Origin: Vitrella brassicaformis CCMP3155
Taxonomy: Eukaryota; Protista; Chromerida
DNA: 64,000 nucleotides
Reading direction: 5' to 3'
Assembly (NCBI GenBank): GCA_001179505.1
Contig: CDMY01000423.1
Coordinates: 1 to 64,000, forward strand
Shown: one piece after another, positions 37,229 to 48,500 of the stretch
How positions within the stretch are numbered: position 1 is the stretch's first letter
Layout of the letters: every line of letters starts with the position of its first letter
Made by a program: the position numbers and the translations under genes
The notes under the pieces: model-generated
What the model saw: only the letters and a program-made list of their open reading frames with translations
Told to the model about the DNA's origin: nothing
Database searches by the model: none

Positions 37229-40200
37229 GGGGGCATAGAGGGAGCAGCCCAACCACACACACGTCCGTCCGTGTGTGTGGTTGTGGCCGCACCGTGGTGA
37301 CGAAGAACTGCGAGCCGTTAGTGTTGGGTCCTGCGTTGGCCATAGAGACGGTGTATGGCCTGTCGTGCTTGAGGGCCCGATGGAACTCGTCCTCAAACTC
37401 ACCGCCCCATATCGACTCACCTGCGGACGGACGCAGAGACAGACAGACAGACACATGGATAATATGGGATGGACGCGTGCGTGTGCGTGTGTGTCTGTCA
37501 CGCCGTGTGTCCTCACCCCCAGTGCCATCTCCATTAGGGTCGCCTGTCTGCAGCATGAAGCCCTTGATCACGCGATGGAACAGACAATTGTCGTAATAGC
37601 TGAAATCACACACACACACACACACAGGGATAGGGAGAGATAGGGAGAGGTCGTGTGGCTGTCTGCTTTGCTACTGACCCGTTCCGCGAGTGCACAGTGA
37701 AGTTCTCCACTGTCCTGGGCACCTCCTGAGGGACGGTGGATGGATGGATGGATCGATGGGCGGGTGACAACACAACATACACACACTTGTGCATTGCATG
37801 GAGGTCCCGGTTGCTGTCTGTGGGATGCGTTGCGTTGCGTGCAGCTTGTTACGTTTGGGAAGAGCTTGACGACGATGTCCCCGACCGTCGTGTGGATGGT
37901 CGCCTGCTTGCCCAGCCGAATCTCACCCGTGTCAATTCCTATCAGATGGATGGATAAATCATCAAATCAACACACCATACATAAGACGTGATTGAACTGG
38001 GCAGCTGTACGTCTGTCTGTCTGTCTGTCTGGATGGATGGATGGATGGATGGCTGACCTGCCATGGCCTGTGCCTCTTCCTTGGTGGGCTTCTCGTTGAA
38101 GATGTCGCGGCTCTCCTTGACCGAGTCGGGCGGCTCGCGACGGCTGAACAGGTAAAACCTGACAACAACACGCAGCCAACACAAACACAGAGATGCGGCA
38201 ATTCAGTGGACGTGCTGTACTGTGCTGGCGTAGGGATGTTCGCCGACCTTTGTCTCTTGTATGACGAGCAGAATAGGATGGGGTCAGCGCTCTCCTGCAC
38301 AATGCGGTCGCCACTCCCACTCATAATCGCACCCGTGGCCTTCTTCTGCACACCGCACGCACACACAGCAGTGATTGCAATGCAGTGTAGCAAGTGACAG
38401 ACCTTCTGTGTGTGTGGAAGTGTGTGTGGTTTGTGGTGGCTGGGTGGGTGGCTGACCCGCTGCGGTTTGCCCTGGAAGAGAGCGATAGCAAGGAACCGCT
38501 CGCCGCTCTCGGGCCGACCCAATATGCGGCTCAACTGACACGCACACACACATGCCATGCAGGGAGTGATAGGCTGATGTAGTGTGGCTGGTTTGGTGGT
38601 TCCCTCCCTGTGTGGGTTACTTTACTTACGTTGTTAGTGATGATGTTGACGACTTTGATGCCGACCATGCAAGGGTAGATGAGGAGGGTGGAGCTCTCGT
38701 CGAACACTATACCCTGCAGGTAAAACGCATCAGACTTGCGCAACTCCTGGTGGACACACCACACACACCACACACACCACACACACAGGGGGAGGGGCAT
38801 TAATGGACTGCATGGCATGTACGTGTGTTTGCCTCTCTGCGTGTGTGTGTGGATTGGTCCCCTCCGTACCTTTTCGGTAGCGAGTCTCCTGCCGAAGTTG
38901 ATTTTGTCGAGGTGCAGCTGCTCCATCAGCGGGTCTGACTGGGCTGTCGTGTACATCTTCACACACACACACACACACACACAAATCCATACCATACACG
39001 CCAGCATCTCGTCGTCACGGCTGGCCTGCCCGGCCTACATCGATGCTCTCGTCGTATTTGCGGATCATTTTGCCCGTCGACAGCCGAAACACCCGCAGAT
39101 GGAAATCTGTTCAAACACATCAACCACCAGTAAGGGAGTGCCCTCCCCTCCCTTCCTTGGTCTGCGTGTGTCCGGGGTGTACGCGTACCTTCGCACAGAC
39201 ATGCAAACAGGTTGCCATCAGGACTCACGGTAAGCGAGAGCGCGTGTGTCTTGCTCTACACACACACACACACACACGCAACACTTAAACGACCCATTAC
39301 GCGATGCCTGCCCTCCCTCCCTCCACCCATCGCACCACCCAACTCACCTTGAGCAGTTCAAACAGGTCTGTGTCGCTCTTGAGGGTGAACTGGATCCGCC
39401 CGCCGGTGCTGGCCGGTGTGGGCAGCTGAAGTGTGTCGGGGTCCCACATCTCCAGCCCACCCGACTTGTCCGCCGACACCACGCAGTGCAGTGCCGGCAC
39501 GTAATGCAGCAGGTGCACCGCCTTCATGTGACGCTCGAACACTCGCAGTGGAGTGCCTGAGGGGTCCGTGGCCGTCACCAGACGCACCTTCGGACACCCC
39601 TTCTCAGATCTGCACACACACAGACAGGTGTCTAAGGTGGATGGATGGATGGATTGCATGCTTGTTTCTTTGTCTTGGTGTGGGCTGGGCTGAGCGTGTG
39701 ATTGATTTCTACTATCCATACATGGCGACAACGGGTTCGGCGGAGTCCCTCGGGTGGACGAATGCCAGGGCCAGTGGGGTGAAGTCAAGCTTCATCATGC
39801 ACGTCATGTCTGACGTGAAGCAAGCAAGGAACACCAAACCACAGACCAAACCACCGCATGCCATGCCACCCACCCACCCACCCACCCACCCACCACACAC
39901 GCACAACGAACGAACACTCTCATTCTTGCTCTCCTGGGTTACCGACCGAAGTTGAGTATGTCGAAGAGTTTGAATGCGTTGTCGGATCCGACGCTTCCGA
40001 GGTAGATGCCGTCGGACGAGACGGCCATGGCGAGGAGTGCGCCAATGTGGGCCCTGAAGTGCTTGACAAACTCGATGCCCTCGTAGCTCTTCTTCCAAAA
40101 CTTGATGTGCCCGTCGGCGCTGCCCGTCATCACAAACTCTACCTCGTTGCTCGCACACACTGATATATGGACATGAGAGCACGGTAAACCGTGTTGTGTT

Positions 40201-40728
40201 TGTCGTGTCGTCCGTCCTCTGCCTGCCTCCCTCCGTGGTTACCTACCTACCGTGTGTGATGGTTTGTCTGTGCATGTAGCTCTTCTCGTACATGTCACAC
40301 GTCGGCAGGTTGTCCAGGTAGACCTGCTCGTTCACCGCAACTGCACCACACATGACCACAAAAGCAACAAACCCAGCAACGCCAGGATGCACTCACTGCA
40401 CTCAATTGTCATGATGATAACACTGCGTCAGTCAGTCAGTCAGTCACCTTTCCGCTTCTTCTTGGCCGGCTGTGGCGGCATCGGCATCGGACCTGACAGT
40501 GTGTCAATCAACACAACGACAACCAGCGCAATGACAGACAGACAAGCACACTCACACACGTGATACATACACATCACATCACTGACCCAAGTCATCTTCA
40601 TCGCCGCCACCTGCAGGCGGATCCAGATCTGCCCGCTCCGAAGTCCCATTCGCATCATCAGCTCCATTCTGATCTTCGTCCGCCGCTGCTGGAGGCGGCA
40701 GGGGAATGTCAAACGAGTCGTCTGCCAT
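36944..40728 (-). CDS. PPWD1: WD40-repeat cyclophilin (peptidyl-prolyl isomerase)
   Basis: [96 protein letters not shown]. Confidence 0.96.
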
Positions 40729-40915
40729 GCCTGCACCGCTGCACTCTCCCTCCCGTTGAGCTTTGCCTCTCAGCGATTTCAGGGAGCACCCTAGGCGGCT
40801 TGCATACTTTGCGAGCTTAGCCAGCGAAGAGGGGCAGGTCAGTATTCACTGACGAAGGGATGGAAGAGGACGAGAGGGACTCAGATGATCAAAGGGAAGT
40901 AAGGGAGCACTCTTG

Positions 40916-42674
40916 ATGGATTTCGACGAGTGGTTCCACGCAAGATTGGACAGACTCACAGAGCCCGACTTCGACGCACGCAAAGGTCAGATCCAGCCGT
41001 GCAGATGTCCGCCACGCTCTCTTGCTGAGTGTGCTTCCCTGTTATTGTGTGTGCAGGTCCGTCGCCCCGTGTGATTCCCCATGTGACGTTTGTCGTGAGC
41101 TACGCCGCCAGCTGGGCGTTTGCCTGCTGCCTGCTGCACCTGTACGACGATGTGCCGCGGGAGAGGACGGGGGCGTCGTCCTATGAGATCATCGCCTTCA
41201 ATATCGCCTGCTTCATCATGCTCCAGATATTCGTCATGGAGGTCAGCCAGCCAGCCAGTCGGCCCGGTGTGTGGTTCGTTATCCCTCCCTGTGTCTGGAC
41301 GCCATTGAAATGTGTGCGTGTGTGTGTGTGTGTGCAGCTGTTCCCGGTGATATCGCTGATCTTCAGTCTGCAAAAGCGTCCGGCCTTCAACTACCTACAC
41401 CTGAAGCTCAAGCAGGCCACGCTTAACCTGGGTCTCCTGTTGGTGGGCATCTGCTGCTACGCAACCCTCATATGCAACTCGTGGCCCGTCTTCATCGACC
41501 CCGTCACCGGCAACCGCCTGTACGGCGCCCGCCTGATGGAGTGGACCGTCAGCTGCCCACTATCCATTTACCTCACCGGGCGGCTCACATTCGGCCGGCC
41601 GCTGAGCGTGGTCATCAAACCCATGGCGTGTATGTCGCTGTCCATTCAGCTGGCACTCGCGTAAGCTTAGCAGGGAGGCCATGCCATGAGTGGCTGAGCA
41701 CCCATCCCCTTATATATCTCGGTCTGTGTCCTTCCCTGTGTATTGTATGTGCAGGGCGACGCTGCTGCGTCCGTCGTGTTTGTGGCTGCGGTGGGCCTTC
41801 GGCGTGCTGCCTCTGTGCTGCTTCCTGGGGGCGCTTCACTACATGCTGGACTTCCTAGTCAAGACCAAGACCAGGGAGCCTGGTGACGGAGAGGCCGATG
41901 ACGCGTCCAGCAGCGACGGCAGTGGCGCGGTGGACGCGTCTGTGGCGCAGCATAAGCCGAGGGAATGGGTGAAGAAGACCATTCTCGGCAGCAAACTGGG
42001 AGGATGTAAGTCGACAGATAGACGAACAAGGGACAACACAGTCCTGGAGGGGAGGGGGTGGTGACTGACTGGCTTTGTTTGGGGTGTGGTGTGTCGCAGG
42101 GACGCTGTGTGCGATAGTGTTCCATCTCACCTTCCTGGGCATCATGCCACCTTGTGTGGACCAGGTAGGTCACTTGACTTGCACCGCACACACATATCAT
42201 GATGGATGCAAATACACAGACAAGCTTTAACACCAGCTGGTGCATACGGGGTGTGTGTGTGTCACATGTGTCAGATTTTGTATACTGTGTTTGATGCGAC
42301 GGCCAAGTTGGTGGAGTGTGTGAGTCAAACGGCCCTCCGCACCACAGAGTGGGATGCCTTGGTCATGCAGGTTAAGATGGTCCAGCAATCAGCCCACAAC
42401 GGGTCAGCCACTGACCGCACGCACACTAACACGAAGACACCCACTTGACCTTCCTCTCTGTGTGTTGCATCCCATCCATCTCTTGCATATCAGTCCGAGC
42501 CCCGAGATGGCTGCCCGTCTGGAGCTGCACCAGAGCAGGAAGGACGAGCTGGAAGACAGGGTGCTGCTGTCACACCTCAGGGACCGCAGCACATCCTCCT
42601 CGCCCGAACGGCTGTCCACCAAGAGCGGGGGATTCAGACGACCATGCCCGCCAAGGGACACACTGCTGCTGTAG
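40916..42674 (+). CDS. Microbial (type 1) rhodopsin with an extra N-terminal TM helix (8TM), 7 exons
   Basis: Exons 40916-40985, 41057-41241, 41338-41660, 41755-42005, 42100-42164, 42275-42402, 42494-42674 splice in frame via GT-AG. Helix C GARLMEWTVSCPL, helix E LRWAFGV, helix G LYTVFDATAKL (retinal Lys). Confidence 0.9.
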
Positions 42675-43968
42675 CTAGAAGGGGAGAGACAAGAGGGAGG
42701 GAGGGGTTGAATGGGGGTTTTGTCTGTCTGTCCGTGTGTCGTCCCTGCCCCTGCCCGTGTCCAAAGGAACGAGGCTGATCCATGAATGGATGGATGGATG
42801 GATGGATGTGGACGCGGGTGGGTGGGGGGCGGCAGAAATGGCCGGCCGTTTTATGGGAGCGGGTGAGAAAAAGACGGAGGAGGGATGGGGGACGGGCCTT
42901 ATCGCTACTGTTGCGTGTTTACATGTGTGTGTGCGTGTCTGTCAGCTGTGGCGAAGGAGGGAGGGAGGGAGGGAGGGAGGGAGGATGGGGGAGAGGATGG
43001 CGCTGTCTTGAGCGGTTACTCACTATTGTGATGTCTCGGCAGCGCTGTGCTGTATAGTCTGAGAAACACAGAGGAAGAGAAGAGAGAGATGGGCACCCGA
43101 TAGGTACCCGCTTGCTTGCCTGCCTGTCTGCCTGCCTGGCCATCTGTGCGGATGAGAGAGGAAGCGGGGAGGTGCGGTGCTCTGTGTGTGTGTGGGACCG
43201 ACCACACACGCACACGTATTTGTAACAGCTTGTGTCAGTGGGTGAGCCGCTGGCTGGCTGGCTGACTGGCCAATGGACAGATTGTCCATTCAGCCAGCCA
43301 GCCAGCGGATGGATGATGAACTGCCTAATGCTGTTTGAATGACGAACTCTTTCCCCTTGCCTACCGATGGATGACTGGATGGATGACTGGATGGATGGAT
43401 GGATGGCATTTTTGCCACAGCCTGTGGGCCTCTGCTGTGGCGTGCGTTTGAGGTGCATGGAATTTGCATGTCGTGGACTCAGGTGTGCGTGTGTCTGCAT
43501 GCATGCCTGCTTCGTGCTGCACGGGTGCGTTGGTGCGTCGGTCGACTCGTGTTTTTGAAACAAATAACTCTCACACAACGCAGTAATTCAGTTCATATCA
43601 ATGTCTTATACATGCCGACATACACAGCACGGCCGTCTCTCATCTCACCCTCATGAAAGAAAGCCTATGCAGACAAACGTCACGTGACGTGTTTGTTCGG
43701 TCAGCCACGTAAGAGAGCTCACTGATCGATCTCACACAGACGTCTCACACCACAGCACAGCCACGTACCTATTCATTGCAGTGTGGGCACCGCCACATTG
43801 AGAGCGAAGAAATACCACTCGCAGGCAGGAAAGTAACACGGGTAAAACCTCCACGCTAGCTACCACCGTCTGCCTGTCGGTGTGTTGTGTCGGTCAGACA
43901 TCATCAGGGTTGGTTGCTGCTTCTCTCTAGCCATCCAATGGCATCATATGATGGCAATGTTGGTCTCT

Positions 43969-44838
43969 CTATCCATCCTGGGGGTTTGGCAAGGAAGCAT
44001 CATCGGAAGAAGTTGGCACAGCAGCATACTGTGCGGAGGCGCCGTTGCCGGCGGCCGCCTGTCTTGCCGCTTTGGGTGGAACCGGGAAACAAAAGGACCA
44101 AGTCGCCATCCCGATTACACACGCTGGTGAAATAATCCCCATCCACAGAGTGCCCAGGGTTTGATCACAGGCAGCTCCATGCAGGCTGCCCGATTCACTG
44201 TCGAAGCACCAGGGATGACTGGTGAAGCTCCACCACCAGAAGTGCCCGATGATGGGAATAGGAATGGCCACCGTGTAGATGGAGAAAGTGACGACATTCC
44301 AGGGAGAGCTCGACAGACCATGATTCCACTTGCGGTGCACCGAGAGCCCGTAAGGGACAATGGCTGCAAGCATCAGCAGGGTCACGACGCCAATAGAGGC
44401 GTGGATTGCCCCACTTCCAGCGATGAAATCTCGCCACACAGCGGCCGCCTCTTCGTTACTGTGGTCGACAAGCCACGCGTAAGACGCCTTGCAATTGCAG
44501 AACTTCGCGTTATCGCTATAGCGACTGACGCTGCACTGCTCAAATTCCTCTCGACCAACGAGCGATTGTGCGACGCTGTGCGGATCACATCGAGTGGCGT
44601 TTCTGCCAGGCACGAGCTCCATAGAGAGACTGTAGGCCGAGAGGGTGTAGTGCTGCTTCACCTCCACATATGCGCCCTCGTGAGATGCGAAGCCACCACC
44701 AGTCAAGCGGTCGGAAAAGAGGGGAAGGGTGAACATGACTGCAAGGATGATGGCTGTGAGATAAAACAGGCCGAGTGCCTCATTCAAGACGTCCAGCGCT
44801 TCCGACCTGAGCCACTGGGACCTGAGAAGGAACATCAA
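43969..44838 (-). CDS. Four-TM membrane protein with Cys-rich first extracellular loop (claudin/PMP22-like topology); possible short upstream exon
   Basis: Uninterrupted 289-aa ORF with four hydrophobic segments, four Cys in loop 1, and a Cys pair in loop 2. Confidence 0.7.
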   Translation of the reverse strand: MMFLLRSQWLRSEALDVLNEALGLFYLTAIILAVMFTLPLFSDRLTGGGFASHEGAYVEVKQHYTLSAYSLSMELVPGRNATRCDPHSVAQSLVGREEFEQCSVSRYSDNAKFCNCKASYAWLVDHSNEEAAAVWRDFIAGSGAIHASIGVVTLLMLAAIVPYGLSVHRKWNHGLSSSPWNVVTFSIYTVAIPIPIIGHFWWWSFTSHPWCFDSESGSLHGAACDQTLGTLWMGIISPACVIGMATWSFCFPVPPKAARQAAAGNGASAQYAAVPTSSDDASLPNPQDG

Positions 44839-45551: not shown

Positions 45552-48500
45552 TTAAGTGAGTACGATGGCCACTCCCCTTCTGGCCCATCTGAGCGGGTCG
45601 CTGGCCGCAGTGGGCAGCGGCAACATCATGACAGGCGTCTCCCGCTTGTCTGTGTTGGTGTACACAGGGCACTCATAAGACTGATATGCGATAGATGAGA
45701 CAGCAAGGGAGATGGAAGACGCCTGCCTGCTGGCGGCAAACGGGGCAGCAGCCTTCCTCAGCTGTGGTCTGGGCGACTGTGAGGGGGAGGGAGTGGGCGG
45801 CTCATCGAAAGTCACTGCCGACTGTCGCCCTTGTACGTGCCTGCTCTGGGCGAGCGACGTTCTCCGCTTGGCAGCCTTCTCGAAGAGGGCTGCTGTGGGT
45901 GAGGAGGCCTCCTCGGGGGTGGGGGAGTGGGGTGGCTGCTGCTCCCCTCGTGTGAAGATCGACTTCCTTCTTTGCACGGGGGGAGATGGGGAGAGGCCAG
46001 CGGGGGGCGGTACGAGCGTCACACGACGGCCACTAGTGGCTGTGGCCCTGACAGAGAGACACACACAGTAGGGATGGGAGACATCGGTGGGTGGATTACC
46101 TACCTGCCGTCCATCATGGCGGCGACGGTGTCGGTGGCAATCTTGACTCTGCTCGTCGAAGACTCGGCCTCACTTCGCTGTACCGACGAAGCCATCGAGG
46201 CGAAGGCCACTGGCTGCCGCCGGGCGCCATGGAGAGAGGCTCTTGAGCTCTTGCCTGTGATGGAGCTCTGTGGGAACCGATCGGGCATTGAACTGTCGGC
46301 AGTGACAGATATGGGGAGGGGCAGTGATGAGGCATCGGCTGACGTGATGGAGATGTGCACAACGGGAAGGGTGGACTCGAGTTGGCGGGGCCGGAGCTCC
46401 TCCAGCTGATAAGTGTGGGGGTCCCACCTGGCCCCCTGCAGGGTCAAGCCGTGCACAAAGTAGCCATCACTTGGATGCTCCGCTATGGCCATGGTGGTCG
46501 TGACGGTGTGGTGCATCTGCACACGCTCCACAGGAAGCTGCAGCCTCATGGCCTGCGTCATGACCATGGCCTTGACGAGCCGCGACGGACTGAAGAGGGC
46601 GCCCAGCCAGAAGGAGGGCGGCTCGTAGCCGAGGTTAGTGCCCTGGGGGTCCCGCAGCGCGGCCCACTGGCTGATCCACGACACCCGGGCAGAGAGGGCG
46701 GCCAGCCAAGAGGCCAACGACGGGGGCGGATGGAGAGGGTAGGGAAACGAATGAGAGTACCTGCAACAGAGGAGGCAGACGTTTTCGGCTCTGGCTGTCA
46801 GTGTGTCTCGCGCACTGACCATAATTTTGGGAGCTGCTGGTTGGCGATTCTGTCAATGAGTGTCTCGATTGGTTCTGTGAGGCTCTCTGTCCGGCCGTGT
46901 AGGGCCTCCAGCGCCTGGTGGAGACTGTCGCTCATCAGCTGCAGCAAACTGTTGTACCGATCCACCTGACGAAGGCGGAGACACAAGTAAGTATACCGCA
47001 TAACAGCCCTCGAGGCATTCAATACCTCTGCGAGCAGAGCCACTGCAAGGCCGTTGACGAAGCTGGTGGTGCCCTCTCTCCTGGGCCACATGCGTCTGTC
47101 CTCCTTCTGTATCCCGCCCGCTGCCACCGACGTGTCTGCCGCCAGCGAAGAGGACGACGCATTGCTGGGCTGACGCCTGGGCCTCTCCGCAACGATGCTG
47201 GCCTTCTTCTGAATAATCGTGCTGCGCTTCTTTCGAAATGGTCGTGGCGAGGGGGCGACCGACGGGGTATCTTGTGTGTCCCGCTTGGCATCGTCAAGCT
47301 GCTTCTGGCTCAATCGCCTTCTCGGAGAGCCTTCAGTGCTCTGTGCAGCAGCAGATGGGGCCGTGGGCACTTTCAGGACGATCTTTGCGGGCAAAGAGTC
47401 GAGGACCCGCTGGATGAGGGCGGCTATTGAGGACGGGCGAATGGCGTGGACTAATGTCTTCTCGGTGTCGTGTTGCTCGTGAGTATGCATCTCGGCGGAC
47501 AATGTCATGAATGGGCCATGCTCCGACGAAGGCTGCAGCGACGCGAGTGAGTGGAGGAAGCCCACTGTGTTGGAGCGCTCGATGGCGAGAGCAGCGTTCG
47601 GATGGAGACCCAACAGCTGATACGTACAAATATATACGGACACTTCGGCGCAGCTATTACCCTCTCCTATTCCTTTCCTGCGCATCGCATACCCTAGGGT
47701 CGTCAGCCTCCGGCCATTTGTTTGCCATGTTCCTCATCTCTTCCACGCCCCATGTCGCCAGCTCAGCCAGCGGCGGCAGGCAATACACAGCAGATGACAC
47801 CTCAGGCATCAGCGACAACCAGCTGGTCGACGAAGCGTCCGACAGATTGACTATTTTCGGTTGCAGGACAAGTGCCACGAGTGATGCGAGGCATCTGGTG
47901 TCGATGGCGTCAGTGAGCCGGCCTCCGTAGTGCAGTGTGGACAGCACGATGCGAAAGGCGTAGACAAGGGACGGAGACAGCAGGGACGGCGGCGTCTGAA
48001 GAGACAGGGGTCATGGGACATAGCGCGGTATCTCGATGCTTACCTGTGCGGCGCTTTGCTTTGAGAGGAATAGAAGTGAGGCGTTGAGGTCGCTCGCCTG
48101 GAACTGATATGCAAAATTGAAACCCAGCGACCCGTAATGACGGCGTTCCTGGAACACAGACATATGTCAGCATCCAAATGGCAAAGAGTCTCGTGATGCA
48201 TCTCACACACCTGTAGAACCGCATGCAGGAAACACGTAGCCATGACCACACGCCTCCAGGCGCCCTTAATCTTTCTCTCGGCGTCCATCCCACCAACGAT
48301 GCTTCCCCGCCTCTTGGCGGGCAGACTATCGCCCCACACCGACTCGGCGACGGCCGCCTCAGCTGCCCCGCTGAACGCCTCTTTGAGGCCGTGTGGCGGC
48401 TCGATAACCAGCGATCGTGAGGCAAGGATGACCGGCTCGGGGAAGCCTGGTGTTGGGAGAGACGTGAGGAAGATGCGGAAGGATGCGGGGAGGTTCGGGG

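What the first reader, a model, noticed from the sequence alone, without database searches (positions are those of the whole stretch)
40916..42674. Stand-alone 8-TM microbial rhodopsin hidden across 7 exons
Seen: the exons splice into an intact ~400-aa protein with eight hydrophobic segments. No single ORF in the track shows it whole. Helix C reads RLMEWTVSCPL (BR D85->E, T89->S, T90->C, D96->L) and helix G reads FDATAK, keeping the D212 and K216 equivalents. Known: an extra TM0 helix plus an EWxx(T/S)CP helix C typifies enzyme rhodopsins (Rh-GC, Rh-PDE, histidine-kinase rhodopsins) and bestrhodopsin modules, all fused to effectors. Here the ~90-aa tail is a short helical linker (TALRTTEWDALVMQVK) plus a charged S/R-rich segment, with no recognisable effector. 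Inference: a retinal photoreceptor of an effector-less 8TM class, possibly signalling through a partner in trans.
Basis: partly seen in the sequence, partly recalled or inferred. Interest (0 to 1): 0.85.

Follow-up and report, generated by a model that had tools for sequence, protein, structure and literature searches.

The report
Stand-alone bestrhodopsin-like light sensor gene
This alga (Vitrella brassicaformis) expresses a seven-exon gene for a light-sensor protein whose closest studied relatives are the sensor modules of "bestrhodopsin" ion channels, but it has no channel or enzyme part, so how it passes on a signal is unknown.

Summary
Seven GT-AG exons (40916-42674, +) splice into a 400-aa protein identical to the database entry CEM11718.1 / A0A0G4FF70 of Vitrella brassicaformis, which is listed as "uncharacterized". 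Transcript contigs from three runs carry all six junctions. They run through the stop codon into a 3'UTR and do not splice onward.

The protein passes Pfam's Bac_rhodopsin cut-off. Its predicted fold matches solved microbial rhodopsins at Z about 25. The model has eight membrane helices, and the extra N-terminal helix (TM0) aligns with that of the 8-TM rhodopsin phosphodiesterase.

A family profile hits the bestrhodopsin Tara-RRB (7PL9) at E 1.5e-57, in both of its rhodopsin domains. The next rhodopsin scores E 0.0016. The Arg, Glu/Asp counterion pair and Schiff-base Lys (K309) are kept.

No effector domain was found, and minus-strand genes lie on both sides. Relatives found are three other chromerid proteins, also without a channel or enzyme domain.

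This is therefore a bestrhodopsin-lineage rhodopsin without the bestrophin: a new variant of a known kind. Retinal binding and signalling through a separate partner are inferred, not shown.

The scan has already noted sister genes elsewhere in this genome (s1-231055, s1-235819, s1-235827). It has also read this same stretch in another window (s1-231069).

The parts
40838..40915 (+). 5' leader of the mRNA (at least this long). It holds two small upstream ORFs: ATG 40860 with 18 codons, whose stop overlaps the main ATG, and ATG 40885 with 5 codons.
   Evidence: RNA contig X1 record 2 starts at 40838; uORFs computed
40916..40985 (+). Exon 1 (aa 1-24), the hydrophilic N-terminus
41057..41241 (+). 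Exon 2 (aa 24-85). It holds TM0 (aa 29-51, 41071-41139) and the first part of TM1.
   Evidence: TM0 aligns with TM0 of Rh-PDE 7cj3 and with Tara-RRB from profile position 42
41338..41660 (+). Exon 3 (aa 86-193). It holds the rest of TM1, TM2, the B-C hairpin, TM3 with RLMEWTVSCP (41530-41559) and most of TM4.
41755..42005 (+). Exon 4 (aa 193-277). It holds TM5, the disordered acidic/Ser-rich E-F loop (aa 231-261, 41867-41959) and the start of TM6.
42100..42164 (+). Exon 5 (aa 277-298). It holds TM6 with W277 (the BR W182 position) and the invariant F284-H285.
42275..42402 (+). Exon 6 (aa 299-341). It holds TM7 with D305 (42293-42295) and the Schiff-base Lys K309 (42305-42307), followed by the cytoplasmic helical extension with RTTEW (42338-42352).
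   Evidence: the donor at 42402 (not 42370) is fixed by the reading frame and by the RNA joint
42494..42674 (+). Exon 7 (aa 341-400 plus the stop). It holds the C-terminal helix (aa 344-374, 42501-42593) and a Ser/Arg-rich tail, and matches no Pfam family.
42675..42947 (+). 3'UTR. RNA contigs continue unspliced past the stop.
   Evidence: X6 record 14 covers 42493-42947 in one piece

Best explanation
Shown: this is an expressed nuclear gene of Vitrella brassicaformis for a 400-aa stand-alone type-1 rhodopsin with eight membrane helices (TM0 plus the seven-helix core). It belongs to the same lineage as the rhodopsin modules of bestrhodopsins and is not fused to a bestrophin or to any other effector. 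It is one of a small chromerid expansion, with at least three other members. Inferred: it binds retinal at K309. R150, E153 and D305 would form the counterion complex. It has no proton-donor carboxylate (L164 at the BR D96 position). It lacks the extra carboxylate that the solved bestrhodopsin carries at the T89 position, having S157 there, so an ordinary visible-light pigment is expected rather than a far-red one. Light-driven movement of TM6/TM7 would be passed on by the long cytoplasmic extension of TM7 (conserved L-R-x-x-E-W) and the following C-terminal helix. In bestrhodopsins these same segments link the sensor to the next domain. Here the receiver would be a separately encoded partner or a paralogous subunit, so the protein would act as a sensor and not as a transporter.
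For: Gene model and expression: searches show the exact match to CEM11718.1 and to an MMETSP ORF, all six junctions in three RNA-type runs, and no onward splice. Rhodopsin identity: Pfam PF01036 scores 27.1 bits against a cut-off of 24.6. The AlphaFold model matches BR and SRII at TM 0.80-0.85 and Z 24-25. Eight TMs: and Rh-PDE 7cj3/7d7q align from model residue 27-29 through TM0 and the linker helix, whereas 7-TM rhodopsins align only from about residue 61. Bestrhodopsin lineage: P0001 alone hits 7PL9 at E 4e-15 over four stretches, covering both rhodopsin domains, TM7 with D..K and RTTEW. The three-sequence profile hits it at E 1.5e-57, and the next hit is at E 0.0016. The tail helix aligns with the post-TM7 linker regions of both Tara-RRB domains. 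No effector. Neighbours lie on the other strand. The relatives P0002 (Chromera, 354 aa), P0007 (Vitrella, 352 aa) and P0003 (Vitrella, 708 aa) also carry only the rhodopsin, and they keep R150, E153, W154, P159, W277, D305, A308 and K309 invariant. Published bestrhodopsins are all fusions, and their rhodopsins regulate the channel rather than conduct ions (PMC10962995, PMC12291454).
Against: There is no direct evidence of retinal binding, a photocycle or a partner. This copy is the most divergent family member, at 27-33% identity to the others. It has Cys280 where its relatives and Tara-RRB have Tyr (the BR Y185 position) and Ser161 at the BR L93 position, so its pocket may be altered. Its C-terminal helix is interrupted by G-P-S-P and is less conserved than in its paralogues. 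The structure model is only moderately confident, with mean pLDDT 64 from an alignment of 3 sequences. No neighbour is shared between this locus and the paralogues' loci that could point to a partner.
Confidence: 0.55

Rival explanations
1. It is a self-sufficient ion transporter, either a light-gated channel or a pump, that needs no partner.
For: The helix-C motif E-W-x-x-S-C-P is shared with Chrimson and other channelrhodopsins. The Glu/Asp counterion pair and the Lys are intact. Vitrella is known to have working channelrhodopsin-like proteins of another family (PMC10147648).
Against: Similarity to channelrhodopsins is at noise level (Chrimson E 0.22-0.36). TM2 (aa 103-130) has no Glu residues. 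The BR D96 position is Leu, so there is no pump-type proton donor. The specific relatives are channel-regulating rhodopsin domains, not conducting ones (PMC13739731 calls Tara-RRB 'channel-regulating').
Confidence: 0.15
2. It is a modulating subunit that pairs with paralogous 8-TM rhodopsins, as fungal NeoR pairs with rhodopsin cyclases. It would have altered light sensitivity of its own, or little.
For: The family has expanded in Vitrella, with at least four members including a head-to-head pair. This copy is the most divergent and has changed pocket residues C280 and S161. Tandem rhodopsin pseudodimers are the rule in RRB bestrhodopsins (PMC10962995).
Against: The Lys, the counterions, W154 and W277 are all retained. 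Nothing here indicates co-regulation with a paralogue, and the paralogues lie on other contigs.
Confidence: 0.17
3. The gene model is incomplete, and effector exons such as bestrophin, cyclase or PAS lie further on and were missed.
For: Related modules are normally fused. Another Vitrella family member is reported by the scan to carry PAS domains (s1-235827, not checked here).
Against: Contigs from three RNA-type runs read straight through the stop at 42674 to 42774-42947 without a joint. The 1.3 kb downstream holds only low-complexity ORFs of 91 aa or less, followed by a minus-strand ORF. Upstream, a divergent WD40 gene starts at 40728. The identical 400-aa ORF was called from the MMETSP transcriptome.
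Confidence: 0.03
4. It is a decaying or function-less duplicate that is still transcribed.
For: It is the most divergent paralogue. No Chromera orthologue was found. It has a long disordered loop and a weakly conserved tail.
Against: The 400-codon frame is intact across seven exons. All family-invariant residues are kept. Transcript contigs have depth similar to the neighbouring gene in the same runs.
Confidence: 0.07

Closest known systems
Bestrhodopsins (rhodopsin-bestrophin fusions; solved example Tara-RRB, PDB 7PL9)
   Same: Both have an 8-TM rhodopsin module with TM0. The sequence kinship is specific (E 1.5e-57 by family profile) and covers TM0-TM5, TM6-TM7, the D-x-x-x-K of TM7, the post-TM7 R-T-T-E-W motif and the following linker helix. 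Phe at the BR W189 position and Gly/Ala at the P186 position are shared.
   Different: There is no bestrophin domain and no tandem second rhodopsin. Helix C keeps Pro (S-C-P) where Tara-RRB has D-A-C or D-A-T, so the extra carboxylate at the T89 position is missing. The host lineage, chromerids, is not among the chlorophytes, haptophytes and dinoflagellates listed for bestrhodopsins (PMC10962995).
Enzymerhodopsins, e.g. Salpingoeca rhodopsin phosphodiesterase (7CJ3, 7D7Q)
   Same: Both share the 8-TM architecture. The predicted TM0 and the helical extension after TM7 superpose over 252-280 residues at Z 24.5-25.1. Both have the E-W-x-x-(T/S)-C-P helix C.
   Different: There is no enzyme domain, and sequence similarity is only marginal (E 0.017).
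Sensory rhodopsin II with its separate transducer HtrII (haloarchaea)
   Same: It is the only well-studied case of a rhodopsin that signals to a separately encoded membrane partner. It is the top structural match (Z 25.4). Neither protein has a proton-donor carboxylate.
   Different: SRII has 7 TM, is prokaryotic, and has no long cytoplasmic TM7 extension. No Htr-like partner is known or seen here. Sequence similarity is weak (E 0.007).
Chromerid paralogues and orthologues: Vitrella CEM22193.1 (P0003), Vitrella P0007 with its head-to-head 720-aa neighbour, and Chromera Cvel_4599 (P0002)
   Same: They share the 8-TM module, the conserved residues and the post-TM7 helix. P0002, P0003 and P0007 have no channel or enzyme domain; the 720-aa neighbour was not examined beyond its rhodopsin part.
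   Different: This copy is only 27-33% identical to them. It has S-C-P instead of A-A-P in helix C, Cys instead of Tyr at the BR Y185 position, and its own acidic E-F loop.

Membership tests
Microbial (type-1) rhodopsin, Pfam PF01036 | Score at or above Pfam's gathering cut-off | tested here: met
   27.1 bits against 24.6, E 3.4e-6. The relatives score 35-45 bits.
Microbial (type-1) rhodopsin, Pfam PF01036 | Seven-helix rhodopsin fold | tested here: met
   The AlphaFold model (pLDDT 64, pTM 0.60) matches BR and SRII at TM 0.80-0.85 and rmsd 2.1-3 A, Z about 25 over 213-226 residues. This rests on a predicted model, not a solved structure.
Microbial (type-1) rhodopsin, Pfam PF01036 | Schiff-base Lys in TM7, four residues after the counterion Asp, and Arg-x-x-(Asp/Glu)-Trp in TM3 | tested here: met
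   D305 and K309 align with D and K of both Tara-RRB domains. R150, E153 and W154 align with R, E and W of Tara-RRB, Rh-PDE, Chrimson and SRII. All are invariant in the family.
Microbial (type-1) rhodopsin, Pfam PF01036 | Covalent retinal chromophore and a light-driven photocycle | not testable with these tools
   This needs expression with retinal and spectroscopy.
Bestrhodopsin | Rhodopsin module of the bestrhodopsin sequence lineage with eight helices | tested here: met
   7PL9 is the only strong PDB hit (E 1.5e-57, next 0.0016). The model has eight helices. A proper phylogeny was not possible because no bestrhodopsin sequences could be retrieved.
Bestrhodopsin | C-terminal fusion to a bestrophin channel domain (R-B or RR-B) | tested here: not met
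   Pfam finds no bestrophin or other domain. Transcripts stop in the 3'UTR. There is no +-strand coding capacity before the next gene.
Bestrhodopsin | Extra carboxylate in helix C (BR T89 position), linked to far-red absorption | tested here: not met
   Tara-RRB has Asp in both domains. This protein has Ser157, and its relatives have Ala.
Bestrhodopsin | Bistable all-trans/11-cis photochemistry | not testable with these tools
   This needs spectroscopy.
Enzymerhodopsin (Rh-GC, Rh-PDE, HKR) | Rhodopsin fused to a cyclase, phosphodiesterase or histidine-kinase domain | tested here: not met
   No such Pfam hit. The protein ends 91 residues after K309.
Enzymerhodopsin (Rh-GC, Rh-PDE, HKR) | TM0 helix in front of the seven-helix core | tested here: met
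   Helix 29-51 superposes on TM0 of 7cj3 and 7d7q.
Channelrhodopsin | Specific sequence kinship and polar or acidic residues lining TM2 | tested here: not met
   Chrimson scores E 0.22-0.36. TM2 (aa 103-130) has no Glu or Asp.
Outward proton pump (BR-like) | Carboxylate proton donor at the BR D96 position (DTD/DTE motif) | tested here: not met
   The motif here is E153 / S157 / L164.

The most novel reading that the evidence does not exclude
The protein is one half of a split photoreceptor. A free bestrhodopsin-type 8-TM sensor would dock through its TM7 extension and C-terminal helix onto a separately encoded channel or signalling protein, or onto a paralogous rhodopsin subunit. A stand-alone bestrophin is one candidate; the scan notes one in this genome, but I did not check it. 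This would be the first eukaryotic counterpart of the archaeal sensory-rhodopsin/transducer arrangement, and a natural system showing how bestrhodopsin modules talk to their output.
Probability: 0.3. Interest if true: 0.75.

Novelty: new variant of a known kind. Interest (0 to 1): 0.52.

Why it matters
As described in the papers I could read, bestrhodopsin-type sensor modules always come welded to a bestrophin channel. A naturally free, expressed copy, part of a small family in the chromerid relatives of apicomplexan parasites, raises two points. It suggests the module can work, or at least persist, without the channel. It also offers a compact 400-aa protein for studying this unusual rhodopsin lineage and for finding what such a sensor signals to. 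The gene is unnamed in public databases. If the pigment is functional, it could be a small optogenetic scaffold with a helix C that differs from the far-red bestrhodopsins.

Tried and rejected
1. A first splice model used the exon-6 donor at 42370. It broke the frame of exon 7. The donor at 42402 restores the frame and is the one seen in RNA.

2. The search for homologous proteins with the 200-aa read-through piece found nothing, because the length filter excludes the 400-aa relatives.

3. The same tool with alignment A1 returned only two of the alignment's own members (P0001 and P0003). It did not even find P0002, probably because the word filter was swamped by low-complexity loops. It therefore says nothing about wider distribution.

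4. The exhaustive phmmer search used only the N-terminal half, with an intron-translated insert, and found 3 representatives. Bestrhodopsins did not reach E 0.001 there, so absence from that list is not evidence of absence.

5. No bestrhodopsin, enzymerhodopsin or channelrhodopsin sequences could be fetched as ids, so no phylogeny was built.

6. The original bestrhodopsin paper (Rozenberg et al. 2022) is not held. I could not check whether it already mentions unfused relatives. Searches for the accession numbers and for "bestrhodopsin" with "stand-alone" found no paper.

7. tblastn of the family against the window found no second copy.

8. The loose ends at 42721 also appear in the DNA run. 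I read them as a repeat boundary and not as a splice.

9. A canonical channelrhodopsin and a proton pump were both considered and rejected on sequence features (see the membership test).

Full report
**What is in the sequence.** Between 40916 and 42674 on the + strand, seven exons with canonical GT..AG borders join into an open frame of 1203 nt, or 400 aa. The exons are 40916-40985, 41057-41241, 41338-41660, 41755-42005, 42100-42164, 42275-42402 and 42494-42674. No single ORF shows the protein whole; the longest is 211 aa and reads through intron 2 in frame. My first model used a donor at 42370 and broke the frame of the last exon. The donor at 42402 is the correct one.

**Database identity.** The spliced product is identical, letter for letter, to P0001. 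P0001 is CEM11718.1 / UniProt A0A0G4FF70 of Vitrella brassicaformis CCMP3155. It is named only "unnamed/uncharacterized protein" and is also held as an ORF of an MMETSP transcript. The window is therefore chromerid (alveolate) nuclear DNA.

**Transcript evidence.** I laid Logan contigs of four runs on 40500-43600. Three runs held about half of the sampled words, as a spliced RNA would (X1, X6, X7). Each gave one contig carrying the joints 40985|41057, 41660|41755, 42005|42100, 42164|42275 and 42402|42494. Intron 2 lies in a masked repeat and is not listed as a joint. However, the record pieces leave 5 record letters for 101 genome letters, so exactly the 96 nt of 41242-41337 are missing. The contigs begin at 40838-40870. 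They run through the stop at 42674 without a further joint, to 42684 (X1), 42774 (X7) and 42947 (X6). Run X2 is DNA-like: one unspliced piece at even depth. The exon with the Schiff-base Lys is therefore in the mRNA, and the mRNA does not splice on to an effector. A loose end at 42721 also occurs in the DNA run, so I read it as a repeat boundary.

**Gene borders.** Upstream, a divergently transcribed minus-strand gene starts at 40728. Its exons include WD40 repeats, and its own spliced contigs end at 40794-40800. Downstream there are 1.3 kb of low-complexity sequence and then a minus-strand ORF (43969-44838) with no Pfam match. Beyond that lie exons of a dynein heavy chain on the minus strand. 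There is no room for hidden effector exons.

**It is a rhodopsin.** P0001 passes Pfam's curated threshold for Bac_rhodopsin (27.1 bits against 24.6, E 3.4e-6).
- An AlphaFold model was built from a three-sequence alignment and is of moderate confidence (mean pLDDT 64, pTM 0.60). The helices score 70-88 and the loops below 50.
- The model has helices at 29-51, 65-98, 103-130, 148-169, 174-196, 202-230, 262-288 and 294-339. It also has a beta hairpin at 136-147, where bacteriorhodopsin has its B-C hairpin, and a further helix at 344-374.
- Foldseek matches bacteriorhodopsin at TM 0.80-0.85 by target and rmsd 2.5-3 A.
- VIA-align gives Z 24-25 to sensory rhodopsin II, bacteriorhodopsins and others over model residues of about 61-324.
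- The two entries of the 8-TM rhodopsin phosphodiesterase (7cj3, 7d7q) align from residue 27-29, so they include helix 29-51 as TM0. For 7d7q the alignment runs on to residue 353 and includes the post-TM7 helix.
- The count of eight helices therefore rests on hydropathy, on the model, and on a superposition with a solved 8-TM rhodopsin.
- The charge distribution of the loops is mostly compatible with N-in/C-in: 5 Lys/Arg before TM0, and a Lys/Arg-rich stretch at the cytoplasmic end of TM1 and TM2.

**Which rhodopsin.** Exon 3 alone hits one solved protein significantly: 7PL9, at E 2.9e-11, in both of its rhodopsin domains. The full protein gives E 4e-15 over four stretches. TM1-TM5 and TM6-TM7 each match both rhodopsin domains. 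A profile of three family members gives E 1.5e-57 (199 bits). The next entries are a fungal pump at 0.0016, SRII at 0.007 and Rh-PDE at 0.017. 7PL9 is the bestrhodopsin Tara-RRB, a rhodopsin-rhodopsin-bestrophin fusion (PMC13739731, PMC10962995). The match starts inside TM0 and runs through TM7 with its D-x-x-x-K. It continues through the R-T-T-E-W motif just after TM7 and into the helical segment that in Tara-RRB links one domain to the next. This gene therefore encodes a bestrhodopsin-lineage module together with its linker helix, but without the channel.

**Residues.** In bacteriorhodopsin numbering the mapping is as follows.

| BR position | This protein |
|---|---|
| R82 | R150 |
| D85 | E153 |
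| W86 | W154 |
| T89 | S157 |
| T90 | C158 |
| P91 | P159 |
| L93 | S161 |
| D96 | L164 |
| W182 | W277 |
| Y185 | C280 |
| P186 | A281 |
| W189 | F284 |
| D212 | D305 |
| A215 | A308 |
| K216 | K309 |

R150, E153, W154, P159, W277, F284, D305, A308 and K309 are invariant in the four family members.

Its statement that E-W-x-x-(T/S)-C-P typifies bestrhodopsins is not. Tara-RRB reads RYMEWTIDAC and RYMEWAVDAT, while Rh-PDE and Chrimson carry the T/S-C-P form.

The lack of an Asp at the T89 position suggests that the far-red state of bestrhodopsins need not apply here. This is inference only. The papers I could read attribute that state to a protonated counterion in an unusual pocket (PMC10962995).

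Cys280 replaces a Tyr that both the paralogues and Tara-RRB keep. This copy is also the most divergent, at 27-33% identity, whereas P0002, P0003 and P0007 are 40-55% identical to one another.

**Family and distribution.**
- An exhaustive phmmer scan of 1.84 billion cluster representatives used the N-terminal half as query. It found only the protein itself, Chromera velia Cvel_4599 (P0002, 354 aa) and Vitrella CEM22193.1 (P0003, 708 aa).
- A word-indexed search with P0002 added Vitrella P0007 (352 aa, 55% identical to P0002).
- P0007 lies head to head with a 720-aa Bac_rhodopsin gene whose ORF pieces read RSMEWACSFP and DVAIK.
- P0002, P0003 and P0007 show no significant Pfam domain other than Bac_rhodopsin (precomputed only for P0007). 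P0003's extra length is a loop insert and a disordered tail.
- The loci share no neighbour that could suggest a partner.
- AlphaFold-DB neighbours that align over TM0 to the C-terminal helix have accessions of the chromerid and Symbiodinium series and various lengths. This hints that such modules are more widespread in myzozoans. I could not retrieve those sequences.
- The scan's own notes list the P0003 gene (s1-231055; same 2577-letter span), the head-to-head pair (s1-235819; same 4657-letter span), a PAS-fused member (s1-235827), and this same stretch read again (s1-231069). I treated these notes as leads and re-derived only the first two.

**How it most likely works.** Shown: the gene is expressed, the protein stands alone with 8 TM, it belongs to the bestrhodopsin lineage, and the Lys and counterions are intact. 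Inferred:
- Retinal binds at K309.
- There is no pump-type proton donor and no acidic TM2, so a sensor is more likely than a transporter.
- The conserved TM7 extension and C-terminal helix connect the sensor to its output in the fused relatives. They are the probable output surface toward a separately encoded partner or a paralogous subunit.

I put about 0.85 on "retinal-binding stand-alone bestrhodopsin-like rhodopsin" and about 0.45-0.55 on the trans-signalling sensor mechanism. The rivals are a self-sufficient channel or pump (0.15), a modulating subunit of a hetero-oligomer (0.17), a decaying duplicate (0.07) and an incomplete gene model (0.03).

**Comparison and novelty.** The protein is a member of the microbial rhodopsin family: the Pfam threshold, the fold and the Lys were all tested and met. 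It is not a bestrhodopsin in the published sense, because the defining bestrophin fusion was tested and is absent, and the helix-C carboxylate is absent too. It works most like a sensory rhodopsin with a separate transducer, but no partner is known.

In the literature I could search, bestrhodopsins are described as always fused and as occurring in chlorophytes, haptophytes and dinoflagellates (PMC10962995, PMC12291454). No paper mentions these accessions. The founding paper was not available to me, so prior mention of unfused relatives cannot be excluded. I rate the finding as a new variant of a known kind, of moderate interest. It is a solid, expressed and unnamed photoreceptor candidate, but domain loss in a lineage-specific expansion is not in itself very surprising, and the function is untested.

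Noticed in passing
window 40838-40918: The mRNA leader holds two small upstream ORFs. ATG 40860 opens an 18-codon uORF whose TGA stop overlaps the main start codon (TGATG at 40914-40918). ATG 40885 opens a 5-codon uORF. This may be translational control of the rhodopsin by reinitiation.
   Followed up: no
window 40579-40728 (-) and 39939-40160 (-): A divergently transcribed neighbour gene with WD40 repeats starts only about 190 bp from the rhodopsin ATG, so the two genes share a short bidirectional promoter region. Its spliced contigs have depths similar to the rhodopsin's in the same runs.
   Followed up: partly
window 43969-44838 (-): A 289-aa minus-strand ORF lies convergent to the rhodopsin gene. 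It is hydrophobic, has no Pfam match, and is of unknown function.
   Followed up: partly
window 46103-47685 (-): These are exons of a dynein heavy chain C-terminal domain (PF18199, E 1e-27).
   Followed up: partly
window 42690-43300: The 3'UTR and intergenic region is built of short tandem motifs (GGATGGAT, GGAGGGAG, GT runs, CTGCCTGC). Contigs of all runs break here, including the DNA run.
   Followed up: no
L002 5160-9816 (Vitrella CDMY01000033.1): A head-to-head pair of family members lies here: P0007 (352 aa) and a 720-aa Bac_rhodopsin gene. The latter's ORF pieces read RSMEWACSFP and DVAIK, so it also keeps the Lys.
   Followed up: partly
P0001 residues 67, 85 and 285 (window 41185-41187, 41239-41241, 42124-42126): Two Glu residues in TM1 (E67, E85) and a His in TM6 (H285) are invariant in the four chromerid proteins. 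E85 also aligns with a Glu in both Tara-RRB domains. Buried charged residues of this kind are unexplained.
   Followed up: no
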